Assembly (NCBI RefSeq): GCF_021869535.1
Contig: NW_026262679.1
Coordinates: 126,480,001 to 126,544,000 of the forward strand
DNA: 64,000 nucleotides
Origin: Mytilus californianus
Lineage: Eukaryota
Direction: 5' to 3'
Notes under the pieces: model-generated
Databases searched by the model: none
Told to the model about the DNA's origin: nothing
The model's input: the letters and a program-made list of their open reading frames with translations, nothing else
In this document: positions 1,161-62,410 of the stretch, piece by piece
How the letters are laid out: every line of letters begins with the position of its first letter
Numbering within the stretch: the first letter of the stretch is position 1
Program-made: the position numbers and the translations under genes

Positions 1161-1337
1161 TAGAAAAAAAAAGAGAAACGAGAAACACTTATGCTGTTTG
1201 TTGTGTACTGGTGTTTGTCTTTTGTCGTTTTTCGTTTTTTTGCCATGACACTTTCAGTTTGTTTTCGACTCATGAATATCTCTTTTGTATTTTTCGCCTC
1301 TCTTTTATAATTTCGGATAAGATTTTTAGTCATAAAT

Positions 1338-1374
1338 CTGGGACTATTATACTAAGTTAGTATAATAGTCCCAG
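1338..1374. mobile_element. 37-bp palindromic insertion with 7-bp target-site duplication CATAAAT
   Basis: CTGGGACTATTATACTAA-G-TTAGTATAATAGTCCCAG has perfect 18-bp arms. CATAAAT lies at 1331-1337 and 1375-1381. A sister copy is at 45075-45112. Confidence 0.85.
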
Positions 1375-1905
1375 CATAAATGCACATCCCATAAAAAGGT
1401 TGCCATCCTATAGATACAGGAAAAAAATCAACAAATTCATTTTTTTAATTGTCAATATGTTTGAAATACTAAAATAAATACTATGTTCTTACCCGTTACT
1501 TTCTCATCTGATGTGAAAAAAAATCCACTTGCAGAAAAAGCAAATATTGCTGCGACGCCAACCAAGAGCCCTATCACACCATGCATAGTGTATTTACATA
1601 AACTGGTATCCTATAGAATATCTGAAATTCTTACAAATATACTTGTCTTTAAATCTAAGATTCCAACTTTACAAACAATTCTTATATATTAAGAATTACA
1701 TATTTCTAGAATATAGTTTCGTTACTTTTCTACAATACGCAAAATCGTTCGGAAAATAATAAGGTCAAACTATTAAAGTGGTACATGAGTCATCCCAATG
1801 ATAACTTTTGGACATTGTATCCACACGTACATTACTTGATAATTAAGTAAAACAAATGATATAATCACTTTTAATATTGAAGAGAGGACATCCATTTTTA
1901 TCATC

Positions 1906-43621: not shown

Positions 43622-46600
43622 CCGACGGAATGTAGGATCGCTGTGTCTCGCTTTTGCGACAAAAGTCGCAGGCTCAACAAAAAGCAGTTTCAAAGAAATT
43701 TCTAGTGAAAATAACTTAAATATCAGTTAAACTTTTCACCTGGTTGTAACTCCGATTAAAGGGGAACAAAAGTGAAAATATATGTAGAGTAGTTTGTCTG
43801 TATTTAGTCTTATATGTTGGTTGCTAAGATTAGTCCACTTCAAGATTATGGTATATTTCAGTACACAACAAAACTTAATGTGTATTGAGAAAATAGGCAG
43901 TACAGATGTAGTGGATTAATTAAAACTGTAATCGCCTTAATATGGTTTTAATATTGAACATGGTGACTTTTTCAATGGAGGTATATAAAATTAAATAAAG
44001 TTTGATGGCGAACGATGTAAAATTTGATTATGAGAATCGGATCGCTTTCACTGTTCGGAGATTATGGAGAAGAAATAGAACGACCCCCTAACTGGGAACG
44101 TATAAAATATCTAGCTAAACCTAAAGTAATCAAGAGAAATGGGTCGTTCTATCGAGCACAGTAAGTAAAATAATTCTATTCATAGACTGACAAAAACTTT
44201 CTATCAAAACACCAAAGCATAGTTCAATGTTTCTATCTTTTGTGCACGGAATTTTTAAATGCGATAAAATAAATCGAAACAAATTTAATTTTTCACCGAA
44301 AATACAGAGAGTTTATAGAGTTTCAGCATAATCTGAATAATTTTCGCGTGCGTCATTGTCATTATACATCAGCTTATGTTTCAATAAATAACCTTTAGGG
44401 TTAGGGTAGGTCTGATAAATGCATTGACATATCTCTAGTTCTTGAAAGTCATACTTTGTTTATGGAATCACCAAATGCAACTGATCACGTGGTTTTACTT
44501 GTCATAAGAAACACGAGTTGCCACTGAAGTAACACAATGTTTTCCCCCTTTCATGGCACTTGAGTACACAGTAAGAACAGTAGCTTGTTCGATCTTTAAT
44601 TTTCAGTGTTATATTTTGAAAACGGCTTTCTTCTTTTTTGACAAGATGTCATCCGTCTTTATTCGATCGTATGGCTTGTGATTGCCCTCATTGTATCTTT
44701 TTAATTTCTTTTCGTAACGTTCCGAAAAGGATCATACAATTATCTTTTACCCAGTCAATAGTGTATATATCTTCACACAATTTTTCAGAATGTTCCAGCT
44801 AGATTTTGTTAAATTTTATATTTAAATAGCGGAAGTGGTGATGTTTTGTTCTTCAGCCACAATTCTTGGGAGGGCATCATGCATTGATTTGGTAGCAATT
44901 GGTGTTTATAACCATGCTTACAGAAGTTATATAATTTTATTTTATTATTGTATTTTTTAACTTTGGTTCATAAATATAATTCTTAAGGTAGTTCATTGTT
45001 GTACCCTTTCTACAGCCATATGACTTTTACAAGATTTTCAACTAAATAACCAACTCAATTGTACTTAGGTACAGCTGGGACTATTATACTAACGTTAGTA
45101 TAATAGTTCCAGGGTACAGGGTCAATTTTGGATGGTCGGCTATGGATGATTCTGATGACATTTAGTCCAAATCGACTCACTGACATCAGAAATATTTTTT
45201 TCAAAGTGTGCTACACAGGGAAATTTCACTCATGTGAATTGAGATTCATGTGCATCTCAAGTGAAATTCACGTGAATTATACCTCAAACGAGCTTATACG
45301 TGAAACACGTGAATTAATTTCACGTGAGTTTCATGTGTCTTTCATCGTGAAAATCAATTGAATTTTTGTTCATGTGAATTTTCAAAATAAAGTTATTCAA
45401 AAAACATCTAAATTTTCAAATTTAATTAAAATCATGAAAAATACAATTTTTTTGTGTGAAGTTCATGTGAAATTCATATGAAAATTTGCACATAAGAATC
45501 ATTTGAAATTCACATGAAATTTTCACATGAGTTTCACGTATAAGCTTGTTTGAGGTGAATCTGTGAGATTCATGTGAAATTTGCTTGAATAAATTTGCCT
45601 GTGTACCTGATGAAAAGCTCTGAAAAACCTTCTGGCTTTGACAAGATAAATCAAATTAGGGATTTTATTTTAGACAAAGATTGGTTGTTTTAAAGTTTCA
45701 TTGAAATCCATTTATGTGATAAAATACCAGTTGTGGTTTTCAACTGCATACCTCTAGAATTGGCAATCGCAAACTCTGTTTTGGTATTGAAAATTTGAAA
45801 TCATTTAATCAATTCCATTGGTAATATAAATTAATAGTGGTCCAGAATGACCTTAGTGCTGAAAATTGAATAAAAATCTCATTGAGATGCATAGAGACAA
45901 TGGGACCAACGCACAAAAATCCCTTTTACACCCCTACTGGACATCAGCATTTGACAATTTTAAGTTTCAATTTTGCCACTCTTTTGCAGACCACTGTTTT
46001 ACTACAGCTGTGGACGGTCATCTATGGTATGGGAGCTGAAACCTCTACAGCAACAGGCAAATGTTAGGGTACAAGAACTTTCTAGATCTAAAGAACTACA
46101 TAGAGATCACCGAGAAAACAGGTAGGTTATTGTTTTTGTTTACAGTATTTGTATGTTTGAGCACCCTAGGTAGCACCTCACCTGCTTTAGGAAGCATATA
46201 ACAAGTCTTGAGAATCAATATTATAAATCAAATTAAAGAACATTGTTTCAGTGGTGGATCCATGACTTTGAAAAAGGGGCTCACTTAAAATACAAAGTAT
46301 AGTAATTTAGAGATAACTGTACTGTATTTGAAGCTTTGTGGACGTCCATCGGTAGTTTTACTGTCGCAAATTTAGTTTACCTGGCGACGCGTAGCGGAGA
46401 CAGTAAATGGATATTTGCGACAGTTAAACTACCGATGGACATCAGCAAAGCTTAAATACAATACAGTTATCTCTATTCTAATGCAAAATAAACAAATCAT
46501 TCAATTTTAGTCGTTATTTCAGTGTAAAATTTTCATTAAACGAAAAATCCGCGAAATGATGTTTTCTTCATTGGCGCCATAACTAGGTGACGTCATATGT

Positions 46601-49600
46601 ATGCTTCGGGCATCAAATGTAAACACCAGGCGTTTTCTTGCTTCTTGTCCGCTTCAACATGTTATAAAATTTGATAAAAAGAAGATTTCTAGGTGCAAAA
46701 TGTGAGTTTTTTGCTTATTATTGAAGAAATTACATGTCAATACATTCAGAAATTCAAAATGTCGGCTTCCTTAGTTACAGACAGGGAGATAGAGAATTTT
46801 ACGCTTATTGCCATCCAATCAGAAACATTGATACAACATAATTGCATCAGAATTAACCATACCCCCTCCCCCCATAAAAAAATAACTTGAGTGTTACATT
46901 GCTTTTATGTCTGCTTACTATTGGATTGAAAAAAATCATTCTGTACTGAAATTGAATTGAGGTGCAAAATGTTTTCTAGGCATAAAGAAATACATTGTAA
47001 GGCTTTGTCATGTCAACAGACTCATTTATTTTCTCCCATCGCACAACCTTTTGGTTGAAGTGCGGATTTATTTTAATTCATGATACATAATTAAATCGTC
47101 TATTTTAAAACAAAATTACTAAATATATAAAATTTTCTTTTTTTAATGGCATCAATGTTTATATTGCTGCAAAAAACTTATCTTTATTATTGACTTCATT
47201 TTGTCTTTACTTATAACTTATTTTGGAACAGAGATAACGTATACTGGAGAGATTATTACAACTATATACAACAGTAGGTCATCATTGTTACATGTTGTCC
47301 AATAATATTATTTTAATAGCTGTTGCTTTAACAAACTACATTTACTAGTTAGGTTTACTAAACTTTTGCCATGGCGTTGTCAGTTTATTTTTTACTTACG
47401 AGTTTGAATGTCCCTTTGGTATTATTCTTTTACTATAAAAAGAAGAGTTTCCATCTATCAATGAATAATTTAATTTTGGATGTAATGCGTCTTCTGATTG
47501 GCTGACGTTGTTTTGTTTATCAGCTCATAGACATAATTTTGTCATGTGACCGTGACGTCATCAACGTTTTTTCATGGTTTACTCTGGTTTAAAATGGAAT
47601 TTAGAATTAATTTATAAGAAATGACTGTAATATTTTTTCTGTCTATTCGAAATAACATAAAAAATGTGGTGCACACTTTAAAATAACCTGCTACGCCAGT
47701 TATTCAGTGTGCACCACATTTTTGATGTTATTTCTTCATAGACAGAAAAAATATTAAGTCATTCCTTAAATATTAGAATGCTTTTACCATGATTTTCGTA
47801 AGACATTGTCACAAACTAACTGTTACAGAAAATGTTAAAATGATATTTATCATTACTTTTCATGCTTTTAAACAATGGCCTAATGCTACCAACTTATAAC
47901 AGTCATTAACTTACTATATATGGCAATTAAACACTGATATGTTTCAAGTCATTCAACGGACCCCACATACCATAAAGAATAAGAAATCAAATCCGTGCTT
48001 ATGAGATCTCTAGTCTTCACTGTTTTTATCTTAAAAAGTAAAATATAATGCCTTAGATTGTATTGACGTCATAAGCATTTAAAACAAATTCCTCAAAAAA
48101 ATTTGTGATATATCAGCATGCGACTTAATGCATTCTTAATGTCAATCTTTATAACAAAACATAATGCCATTATTCAATAACCACTCAAAATCCTTAAAAT
48201 ACTATTAAAGAAACTCTAAATTCAATTCTCAACTTATCATAGCCAAGAAAAGAAATTCACTGTTTATACCTTTTCCTAAAACGAATACATTGATTTTTAA
48301 AACAATGAAGTCATGTTGTTTTAATCAGAATGTTGCTTTCTGTTTTTGTTTTGATTATATTTTAACTTGAGTTGAATATTCATATTTACATCAATTATAT
48401 TTGAAATTCTGTAATATTGCTTCCTGCTATTAACCATTGCCCTAATAATGTTATATAAGTAGCTATTTATGTATTAATAGGTATATTCCCTTATTGAGAA
48501 TATCGTTCTCTAGTGCACAAGTTAACTTTCTTAAGAATCGTAACCATGCAGGTTTATTTGTGAGAGTTGTACCTTCAGAAAAAGCAAACAATGAGTTTAA
48601 ATGAGTCAAGAAGATGAATTTCATCAAGAACATTGAATGGTTTTTATCGTAAAATTCTTTTTTGTCAATTATTCACTGATGCAAAATTCAAAAGCCAGGG
48701 AAATTCCTTCTGTATTTGATACTCCTGGAATTTAGTAAATGTCTTGAAGGCACTGTTTGACATCTTTTGACGAGCTCAAGATACTTTTCCATTACTTAAT
48801 TTTTTCATCAATTGTTTATTTGCCAATTATGTTTTTTTCTTTCTTAGTCAGTAACAGTTATATAGCTTCTACACTAATTTATACCAATATTAATAAATAT
48901 ATTTTGGTTACCAAACATCTTGGAGTAATTTTGTCGAATATTAAATCCTTACAAATGCTTTAAACTTATAAAACAGGGTATGTTGTTGGTGGTTCATTTT
49001 TGCTATGATATGGAATTTTTTATCGCAATTTTAAGTTCATGTACACTTCCAGCAGAACTAGAAAGTTTTTATGTTTTAAGAATCTGCTTCATGCTACCAT
49101 TACATGATATATATGTTTATCCTCTTTAAGTTAAAGTTTATTTCATATTTTAGGCGGGAGTATTTATACAGCTGTGGACGTAATACACCAATATGGCTTG
49201 TGGGTAAAGGAGCACAACAGGCTGAAGACCGGCCTCGAACACGACAATTGGCAGAACCTAAACAGCCACCTAAAGAATATGAAGGAGCACGACAAATAGA
49301 AACAATCATACCAAAATCTGCCTTGAAAGGTGAACCAAGTGAAAGAACCCAAAGTTTGTCTTTCCCTAAGAAAAGGCCTGAAGGACCATTTAGAGATCCT
49401 GTATGGTCGGTAAGTTAATTAAAAAAAAATCTATTCTCTTTATATTAAGAGACAACAACGATGTCATATTTTAGAATACTATTACCGTAATATATTTTCA
49501 GACAATTACAAAAATAGCAATATAGAAAAATTGTTTCCGAGATTAGGATTTTTTGGAAGCATCATGCCATGTTTGATCTACATGTAACAACAACCATCAA

Positions 49601-60200: not shown

Positions 60201-60954
60201 ATTTCGATTTGTACAGAGTTAATCGCTTTGTTTCAAACGCTCAAATGATTTAAAACTGGTTAACGTTTACTATTGTGTTATTTACGCCTGGCGGACGAGT
60301 TAGTAGAAAAAAGATGTACGACATATCCCGACTATGCGATTTTCGTGTATGTCATATTTTTGTCAATGAATTAATAGCCGGCACAAAACACCGCAATAGG
60401 CGGCAGATTTTGCCGGTTGCCGGCTCTTATTGAGAACACTGTTATATAATCGACTGATTTTGATGAATCACGATAAATTCTTTCCAAAAATAACAGTAAC
60501 TGTTAATTATTTGAGACCTCTGAAAAATCACAATAGGGATAGTTTGACGAATCACAATAAAATTTTAACCAATTTGACGCTAACGGTAACCGAAAATGAC
60601 TGTTTGACGCCTGACGGTAAAGGGCATTCCTACCCTCATACTAAATGTTCTATCAATAACAATAAAATATGGGCAATGCGAAGAAAATAGTTTCAATGCT
60701 TATATGTGTATCTTTATTGTATAGATTGACACGATTTTCTTCCCATTGCCCATATTTTATTATTATTGATAGTAGTTTTTAGTACTCTCTAGTGTCTGTG
60801 GCTGTGCTGTGGCCCAACCTGTGAAATATTGAAAGACTTCGAAATTATATTACCATTCGATTGCAGGCAATTTCTTTGAACTTTTCCATTCTTTTGATCT
60901 ATTTCTGTCATATTGAAATCTAGGTTGTCTGTGTGTTTTTCTAGGTTTTCCCAT
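54274..60954 (-). CDS. NOP16: Nucleolar protein 16, 178 aa. Exons 60954-60854, 57235-57127, 56459-56387, 55132-55026, 54420-54274
   Basis: GT-AG introns with matching phases (2,0,1,0). Translation MGKPRKTHRQPRFQYDRNRSKEWKSSKKLPAIECKQIKKAWIANKSVEQNMRLMGLSSDPN...ELEEEASIP...YGEDYKAMAKDRKNYYQDTPKQIKRKI matches the NOP16 signature (W..KSV.QN..MGL..DPN and GEDYKAMA.D.KNYYQDTPKQI). Confidence 0.95.
57760..58203. mobile_element. MITE with gtctcactaatta…gcgaca TIRs and subterminal tagcgacaagaa repeats
   Basis: Left gtctcactaattagcgacaagaag; right cttctgtcgctaaattataattagtgagac. Confidence 0.65.
58318..60441. mobile_element. 2.1-kb non-autonomous DNA transposon with 17-bp perfect TIRs CAGTGTTCTCAATAAGA (hAT-like ends)
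   Basis: cagtgttctcaataaga at 58318 and tcttattgagaacactg ending at 60441. No clean 8-bp TSD. Confidence 0.65.
59306..59398. repeat. ~90-bp hairpin with 23-bp arms (aagagttccatatggcacccc…ggggtgccatatggaactctt)
   Basis: Arms are near-perfect reverse complements. Confidence 0.8.
60651..60771. repeat. ~120-bp hairpin/MITE with 38-bp arms
   Basis: tatcaataacaataaaatatgggcaatgcgaagaaaat versus attttcttcccattgcccatattttattattattgata (2 mismatches). Confidence 0.8.
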
Positions 60955-62254: not shown

Positions 62255-62410
62255 CTATGATATTATTACGTGATTATTTCTGTATTGGCCTTGTTATTGG
62301 TCCGAGGCTTACTGTATTGGCCTGAGGCGAAGCCGAAGGCCAATACAGCTGGCCGAGGACCAATAACAAGGCCAATACAGAAATAATCACGTAATGATAT
62401 CTTTATTAAT
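62255..62410. mobile_element. ~150-bp near-perfect palindrome, the left part of an element extending to about 63250
   Basis: Arms attacgtgattatttctgtattggccttgttattggtcc and ggaccaataacaaggccaatacagaaataatcacgtaat. Related tattggccgag repeats occur at 63140-63185. Confidence 0.8.

What the first reader, a model, noticed from the sequence alone, without database searches (positions are those of the whole stretch)
45068..45119. Second, independent insertion of the same 38-bp palindrome, in a THEG intron
Seen: CTGGGACTATTATACTAACGTTAGTATAATAGTTCCAG between two GGTACAG copies. It differs from the 1338 copy only by one central base and one arm mismatch, and the flanks are unrelated. Inference: two near-identical copies with different TSDs in 64 kb imply a high genomic copy number and fixed structure, i.e. 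propagation as a 38-bp unit, not segmental duplication.
Basis: partly seen in the sequence, partly recalled or inferred. Interest (0 to 1): 0.7.

Follow-up and report, generated by a model that had tools for sequence, protein, structure and literature searches.

The report
Transposon excision scar, not mini-transposon
The 38-letter palindrome between two copies of GGTACAG is most likely the scar left when a cut-and-paste jumping gene cut itself out of this intron. It is one of many hundreds of such scars in this animal genome. It is probably not a tiny mobile element that copies itself as a 38-letter unit.

Summary
Window 45075-45112 is a 19+19-nt palindrome with one arm mismatch, between two GGTACAG copies. 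Window 1338-1374 is a 37-nt sister between two CATAAAT copies. Their flanks are unrelated.

The arm is the outer end of the 31-bp terminal inverted repeat (TIR) of a 1238-bp non-coding transposon family with 7-bp target duplications.

- **Copy number:** the exact 18-nt arm occurs 1280 times in the 1.65-Gb genome. 341-537 loci are tight arm-to-arm palindromes.
- **Structure is not fixed:** lengths run 24-54 bp. Arms are trimmed independently, and junctions are blunt, use 1-2 nt of microhomology, or carry 1-18 nt of filler. No junction class exceeds about 8%.
- **Arms stop at nt 19 of the 31-nt TIR:** exact prefixes of 18, 19, 20 and 22 nt occur 1280, 667, 196 and 99 times.
- **One-sided deletion copies** of the 1238-bp element break at the same position.

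This matches Drosophila P-element donor-site repair: TSD + up to 17 nt + filler + up to 17 nt + TSD. The best reading is an excision scar from a P-like staggered cut.

No transposase was linked to this TIR, and no occupied allele was seen, so P-superfamily membership is inferred, not shown. Other agents of this scan reached the same reading on other DNA of this genome.

The parts
45068..45074 (.). left copy of the 7-bp target-site duplication GGTACAG
45075..45093 (+). left arm: nt 1-19 of the family's 31-bp terminal inverted repeat
45094..45112 (-). right arm: nt 1-19 of the same TIR on the other strand, with one substitution at 45108; joined to the left arm with no filler
45113..45119 (.). 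right copy of the target-site duplication GGTACAG
1331..1381 (.). sister scar: CATAAAT + 37-nt palindrome (18+19 arms, no filler) + CATAAAT
44021..44161 (+). open frame with a weak THEG-repeat match (upstream exon candidate)
49080..49415 (+). open frame with a THEG repeat, PF14912 50.2 bits (downstream exon candidate)

Best explanation
A member of a cut-and-paste DNA transposon family once sat at this spot in the intron and had duplicated GGTACAG when it inserted. The family has a 31-bp TIR and 7-bp target duplications, and 1238-bp non-coding copies are still present. Its transposase later cut the element out. The inferred cut is staggered, as in the Drosophila P element: exactly at the element's 3' ends, but about 19 nt inside the TIR on the other strand. 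Each chromosome end therefore kept a 19-nt single-stranded tail of TIR sequence next to its copy of the target duplication. End joining ligated the two tails. Here nothing was lost or added (19+19 = 38 nt); at 1338 one base was lost (19+18 = 37 nt). Shown: the anatomy, the family, the 19-nt ceiling on arm length, the mix of junction types, and the one-sided deletion copies. Inferred: that excision occurred, the staggered cut, and membership of the P superfamily.
For: 1. The arm is the outer part of a 31-bp TIR of a 1238-bp element with a 7-bp TSD. At least 40 scored copies are 84-96% identical, out of 193 first-look candidates.
2. Tight palindromes number 341 loci with exact 15-nt arms and 537 with exact 12-nt arms (controls 0). 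Their centres are very variable.
3. In 48 distinct loci read by eye, 13 junctions are blunt, 8 have 1-2 nt of microhomology, 15 have 1-3 nt of filler and 12 have 4-18 nt of filler. In the 20 loci computed, 13 have a perfect 7-bp TSD and 6 more have 1-2 mismatches.
4. Exact TIR prefixes fall 1280 (18 nt), 667 (19), 196 (20) and 99 (22). The excess at 20 nt over the long TIRs is about 17% of the 19-nt arms, which is the background frequency of G. So arms end at 19 nt or fewer.
5. Partial copies break at the same place: arm19 joined to element 280-1 (L025/26), and arm18 + TT + element 568-1238 (L054). This is the expected product of repair synthesis from one side followed by end joining.
6. Scar centres are stable once formed. 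Copies of a host repeat that are 89-91% identical all keep a 35-bp scar, and two segmental duplicate pairs carry identical scars.
7. Experimental P-element donor junctions have the same layout, TSD + up to 17 nt + microhomology or filler + up to 17 nt + TSD, and include the SDSA-plus-end-joining class (PMC2895639). The 17-nt cut inside a 31-bp TIR is described in PMC7776569.
8. The 7-bp TSD and a weak T..GTnnnAC..A target motif resemble Galileo of the P superfamily (7 bp, GTAnTAC; PMC4168063).
9. The genome encodes P-type transposase domains: 51 PF21787 hits, some in open frames of up to 893 aa.
Against: No allele or paralogue with a full element at a scar site was seen. The only reads available were Logan contigs, which break inside the palindrome. 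They show just the scar allele in two samples. No transposase gene was found between these TIRs. None of the PF21787 hits lies inside a TIR pair, and the 9.4-kb and 1.8-kb TIR-bounded stretches I could read hold retroelement pieces. The ceiling of 19 nt would also arise if every copy descended from a 19+19 founder. That alternative is rejected on other grounds, not by the ceiling alone.
Confidence: 0.78

Rival explanations
1. The palindrome is a minimal TIR-only element that a transposase moves as a 36-38-bp unit.
For: Each copy has its own 7-bp TSD at an unrelated site. Some junction forms recur at several loci, including about 11 perfect 38-bp copies in the first half of the 20-mer listing.
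Against: There is no dominant master form; no class exceeds about 8% of 48 loci, and most centres are unique. Centres do not drift after formation, so the variety arose when each junction was made. The same nt 17-19 break is seen in one-sided deletion copies of the 1238-bp element, which this model does not explain. If the enzyme cuts 19 nt inside each end, a 38-bp element would fall into two single strands (inference). P-type elements also need subterminal binding sites beyond the TIR (PMC7776569).
Confidence: 0.07
2. The interior of full elements was lost without transposase, by hairpin or cruciform processing or by replication slippage between the inverted repeats.
For: The 31-bp inverted repeats could pair. 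Both TSD copies would be kept.
Against: Such loss should leave arms of any length up to the full 31 nt. Instead arms stop at 19 nt, with no excess at 20-22. Fillers and blunt joins of two identical, non-complementary ends fit end joining of a two-ended break better.
Confidence: 0.08
3. It is an excision scar, but from a family outside the P superfamily, or the 19-nt limit reflects a bound protein shielding the termini from nucleases, not the position of the cut.
For: No transposase is linked to this TIR. The TSD is 7 bp, not the 8 bp of Drosophila and zebrafish P.
Against: According to the review read, a long stagger distinguishes P from the other characterised cut-and-paste transposons. Galileo, a P-superfamily member, makes 7-bp TSDs with a similar target motif.
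Confidence: 0.15

Closest known systems
Drosophila P-element excision footprints (17-nt staggered cleavage followed by end joining)
   Same: Both target-duplication copies are kept. Only the outer part of a 31-bp TIR remains on each side, up to a fixed maximum. Junctions are blunt, use 1-3 nt of microhomology, or carry short or templated fillers. One-sided repair synthesis followed by joining gives internally deleted copies (PMC2895639, PMC7776569).
   Different: The maximum retained is 19 nt, not 17, and the TSD is 7 bp, not 8. These are fixed natural scars in a non-insect animal genome, numbering in the hundreds to about a thousand, not laboratory events. The enzyme is unidentified.
Galileo and 1360 (P superfamily, Drosophila)
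   Same: 7-bp TSD. The palindromic target preference has G-T at the start and A-C at the end (GTAnTAC in Galileo).
   Different: Galileo has very long foldback TIRs; here the TIR is 31 bp. The mussel motif is weak, comes from only 63 flanks, and adds a T/A pair 3 nt outside the TSD. No transposase comparison was possible.
MITEs (miniature inverted-repeat elements)
   Same: Short, non-coding, made of TIR sequence, flanked by TSDs, high copy number.
   Different: MITE families have a conserved length and interior and amplify as units. These loci share only the outer 19 nt or fewer of each TIR and differ at nearly every junction.

Membership tests
Excision footprint of a cut-and-paste transposon | Both copies of the target-site duplication retained around a remnant | tested here: met
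   GGTACAG x2 and CATAAAT x2 in the window. Of 20 loci, 13 have a perfect 7-bp TSD and 6 have 1-2 mismatches.
Excision footprint of a cut-and-paste transposon | The remnant consists only of the element's termini, with junction-to-junction variation (trimming, microhomology, filler) | tested here: met
   total length 24-54 bp, arms 12-19 nt, filler 0-18 nt.
Excision footprint of a cut-and-paste transposon | A full element at the same site in another allele, individual or paralogue | tested here: inconclusive
   Logan contigs of 4 runs break inside the palindrome. Two samples show the scar allele; the other two give no contig across the site. No occupied or empty allele was seen.
P superfamily (P, 1360, Galileo) | Transposase with a THAP domain and an RNase-H-like catalytic domain split by a GTP-binding insertion, encoded between these TIRs | tested here: inconclusive
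   The genome has 51 PF21787 hits. None lies inside a pair of long TIRs.
P superfamily (P, 1360, Galileo) | 7- or 8-bp target-site duplication | tested here: met
   7 bp. Galileo makes 7 bp and P makes 8 bp.
P superfamily (P, 1360, Galileo) | Long staggered cleavage inside the TIR (17 nt in Drosophila P) | tested here: met
   Met only indirectly. Retained arms stop at nt 19 of 31: 1280, 667, 196 and 99 for prefixes of 18, 19, 20 and 22 nt. Deletion copies break at nt 17-19. No biochemical mapping was done.
MITE or minimal mobile element | Copies share one conserved length and interior, consistent with descent from a master copy | tested here: not met
   most centres are unique, and the commonest classes are each about 6-8% of loci.

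The most novel reading that the evidence does not exclude
The 36-38-bp TIR-only palindromes can themselves be picked up and reinserted by the family's transposase. That would make them the smallest mobile DNA elements known, with the junction variety produced afresh at each move.
Probability: 0.05. Interest if true: 0.8.

Novelty: new member of a known kind. Interest (0 to 1): 0.38.

Why it matters
If the reading is right, this genome holds a natural archive of many hundreds of germline excision-and-repair events for one transposon family. Without any biochemistry, the archive gives two things. First, it shows where that family's transposase cuts: about 19 nt inside the TIR, against 17 nt in the fly P element. 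That would suggest the unusual long stagger extends beyond the one biochemically mapped case, Drosophila P. Second, it gives the mix of end-joining outcomes in a bivalve germline. It also warns annotators that short perfect palindromes with target duplications are not necessarily tiny mobile elements. For the THEG gene, the scar is an intronic 38-nt hairpin-forming insert with no shown effect.

Tried and rejected
- **Autonomous copy among held loci:** L052 (9.4 kb, TSD GTTTCTG) contains a nested reverse transcriptase. L051 (1.8 kb between 17- and 19-nt arms, TSD GGTCTCT) holds a LINE fragment. L048-L050 have no ORF of 150 aa or more. The 1238-bp element has no ORF over 51 aa.
- **PF12017:** no hit, but its control rang nowhere, so this is uninformative.
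- **PF21787:** hits exist but were not linked to the TIR.
- **Metagenome scan for the 31-mer TIR:** 0 matches.
- **Reads:** only Logan contigs were laid, and they end inside the palindrome, so the allele test failed.
- **Rfam on 44800-45400:** nothing near any gathering score. A known structured-RNA family was therefore rejected.
- **Segmental duplication of the two window copies:** rejected, because the flanks are unrelated.
- **A true 20-nt or longer arm:** rejected as chance. The 20th base is the complement of the partner arm's 19th, or background G.
- **The one 25-nt arm (L036):** its extra GGGACTA also equals TIR nt 3-9, so it may be templated filler.
- **Limit reached:** I did not try to get around it, so several candidate loci stayed unread.

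Full report
**Observation**

At window 45068-45119 the sequence reads GGTACAG, then a 38-nt palindrome, then GGTACAG. The palindrome has 19+19 arms and one mismatch at 45108. At 1331-1381 it reads CATAAAT, a 37-nt palindrome, CATAAAT. The 18-nt arm CTGGGACTATTATACTAA matches four times in the window, against 0.05 expected from shuffles. Each strand of both palindromes can fold into a 17-bp hairpin (z = -7.8 and -9.5). BLAST of 500 nt on each side aligns nothing but the palindromes. The site lies between + strand open frames that carry THEG repeats, at 44021-44161 (weak) and 49080-49415 (PF14912, 50 bits). The exons were scanned singly by reference. No Rfam family comes near threshold.

**What the arm belongs to**

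The window is C99:126480001-126544000 of a 1.65-Gb assembly. The arm is the outer part of a 31-bp terminal inverted repeat, CTGGGACTATTATACTAACGGGACTGGAAAC. That TIR bounds a 1238-bp element with no ORF over 51 aa and a 7-bp target duplication (L053, TSD GTGTTTC). A DNA search with the element found 193 first-look candidates. The 40 that were scored are 84-96% identical, and many are full length.

**Copy number and structure of the palindromes**

- The 18-mer with up to 1 mismatch occurs 2810 times (control 4). The exact 18-mer occurs 1280 times.
- Two arms facing each other within 30 nt occur at 341 loci with exact 15-nt arms and at 537 loci with exact 12-nt arms. Controls were 0.
- The arms are exact, but the centres differ from locus to locus. 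Total length runs 24-54 bp.
- I measured each arm as the longest prefix match to the 31-nt TIR in the 50 distinct loci listed. This was done by eye, and I dropped one composite and one duplicate. Arms are 15-19 nt long, mostly 17, 18 or 19. Four apparent 20s, one 21 and one 25 also occur.
- Junctions in those 48 loci: 13 blunt, 8 with 1-2 nt of overlap, 15 with 1-3 nt of filler, 12 with 4-18 nt of filler. No junction class exceeds about 8%.
- In 20 loci computed with their flanks: 13 have a perfect 7-bp TSD, 4 have one mismatch, 2 have two, and 1 is a composite.
- Some longer fillers repeat arm sequence. The filler in L043 shares 7 nt with the arm, and the filler in L010 is itself palindromic.

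**A ceiling at 19 nt**

Genome-wide exact counts of TIR prefixes are 1280 (18 nt), 667 (19), 196 (20) and 99 (22). After setting aside roughly 100-120 ends of long elements, about 48% of 18-nt arms continue to nt 19. Only about 16-17% of 19-nt arms show the G of nt 20, which is the background frequency of G in this 33% GC sequence. In a 19+19 blunt join, the apparent 20th base is simply the complement of the partner arm's 19th. So arms end at nt 19 of a 31-nt TIR.

The finding's 38-nt copy is therefore the untrimmed 19+19 junction, and the 1338 copy is 19+18. About 11 perfect 38-bp copies appear in the first half of the 20-mer listing. That extrapolates to roughly 20-25 genome-wide.

An earlier agent's note on this genome inferred a 20-nt cut. 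My counts favour 19, but a 20-nt cut followed by routine loss of one base cannot be excluded.

**The same break in partial elements**

- L025/26 is a 19-nt arm joined directly to positions 280-1 of the 1238-bp element.
- L054 is an 18-nt arm + TT + positions 568-1238.
- L051 has 17- and 19-nt arms around a 1.75-kb LINE fragment, inside a perfect GGTCTCT duplication.

A model in which a 38-bp unit spreads does not explain why deletion copies of the long element break at nt 17-19.

**Centres are stable once made**

A 35-bp scar variant lies inside a repeat of about 750 bp whose copies are 89-91% identical. All three copies that I hold keep 35 bp and differ only by substitutions. Two segmental duplicate pairs carry identical scars: C1:92193517 and 92201792 (41 bp), and L028 = L029 (27 bp). 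The variety of centres therefore arose when each junction formed, not by later decay of one founder.

**Mechanism**

In Drosophila, P transposase cuts at the element's 3' ends and 17 nt inside the 31-bp TIR on the other strand (PMC7776569). Each donor end is left with a 17-nt non-complementary 3' tail. Sequenced repair junctions have the form TSD + up to 17 nt + microhomology or insertion + up to 17 nt + TSD. [quoted passage not shown]

The loci here have that anatomy with 19 in place of 17, including the one-sided products. I therefore read the finding as an excision scar from a P-like staggered cut. Excision itself and the stagger are inferred, not observed.

**Membership of the P superfamily**

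In favour:
- The TSD is 7 bp. Galileo, a P-superfamily member, also makes 7 bp (PMC4168063).
- Across 63 outer flanks there is a weak palindromic target motif: T at -10 (71%), G1 (32%), T2 (51%), A6 (49%), C7 (35%). That is T..GTnnnAC..A, close to Galileo's GTAnTAC.
- The genome has 51 PF21787 hits, with open frames of up to 893 aa.

Missing: no such hit lies inside a pair of long TIRs. The larger TIR-bounded stretches I could read hold nested retroelements. Several 3.3-4.3-kb TIR pairs, and a TIR 6.6 kb upstream of a P-type gene on C121, could not be read.

**Allele test**

Only Logan contigs were available. They end inside the palindrome. Two samples of the same species show the scar allele with both flanks. 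A third sample and a related species give no contig across the site. No occupied or empty allele was seen, so the most direct test remains open.

**Rivals**

- A self-propagating 38-bp unit is disfavoured by the junction variety, the stable centres and the shared break in partial elements.
- Transposase-independent loss of the interior by hairpin processing should leave arms of up to 31 nt. It does not.
- A non-P family, or protein protection of the termini instead of a cut at nt 19, remains possible.

**Earlier notes of this scan**

After I had written down the footprint idea, look-ups showed that other agents read the same kind of palindrome in this genome as P-type excision scars. They call the genome a mussel; I did not verify the species. 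One of those notes covers the sister copy at 1331-1381 of this window. These are unchecked notes, not independent evidence. The tests above are my own.

**Verdict**

The 'fixed 38-bp mobile unit' reading is not supported. This is a new member of a known kind: a P-type excision footprint, here as a large natural set with a 19-nt limit and a 7-bp TSD.

Noticed in passing
window 45216-45619: A high-copy repeat about 100 nt downstream of the scar, made of nested inverted repeats of TGAAATTCACATGA-like units. Logan word depth is 100-1000 times that of the flanks.
   Followed up: no
window 62259-62401, 46328-46456, 60643-60779: Three other foldback structures with long arms (70, 63 and 55 nt). They look like foldback or MITE-type elements of other families.
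   Followed up: no
L030:906-1646, L027:1371-2108, L005:1004-1653: A 35-bp scar variant rides inside a repeat of about 750 bp whose copies are 89-91% identical. The same variant appears at at least four C1 sites (35648248, 54166476, 64505872, 77727833). Part of the scar count therefore comes from hitch-hiking in another repeat.
   Followed up: partly
L001:1501-1647 (G000:C1:1865990-1866136) and G000:C2:8956107-8956160: Composite forms. The first is element positions 1-110 + a 19-nt arm + an 18-nt arm on the other strand, inside the TSD TGTTTAC. The second is a triple: arm, arm, then an arm on the other strand. Simple two-end joining does not explain either.
   Followed up: no
L051:8214-10000 (G000:C1:12883669-12885455): Scar arms of 17 and 19 nt inside a perfect GGTCTCT duplication enclose 1.75 kb of a LINE (zf-RVT match). 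This is either retroelement DNA captured during break repair or a LINE insertion exactly at a scar centre.
   Followed up: partly
G000:C57:23841960, C35:14211185, C110:39510728, C121:69837019, C132:103009597: Five P-type RNase-H N-domain hits with nearly identical scores (78.7-78.8 bits) in open frames of 393-462 aa. This suggests a young multicopy P-like element. Its ends were not examined.
   Followed up: no
G000:C2:62477865-62477971, C13:22507491-22507596, C13:68079597-68079700: Pairs of facing TIR ends about 105 bp apart. These may be a separate mini-element class of uniform length, which unlike the scars could be a true MITE.
   Followed up: no
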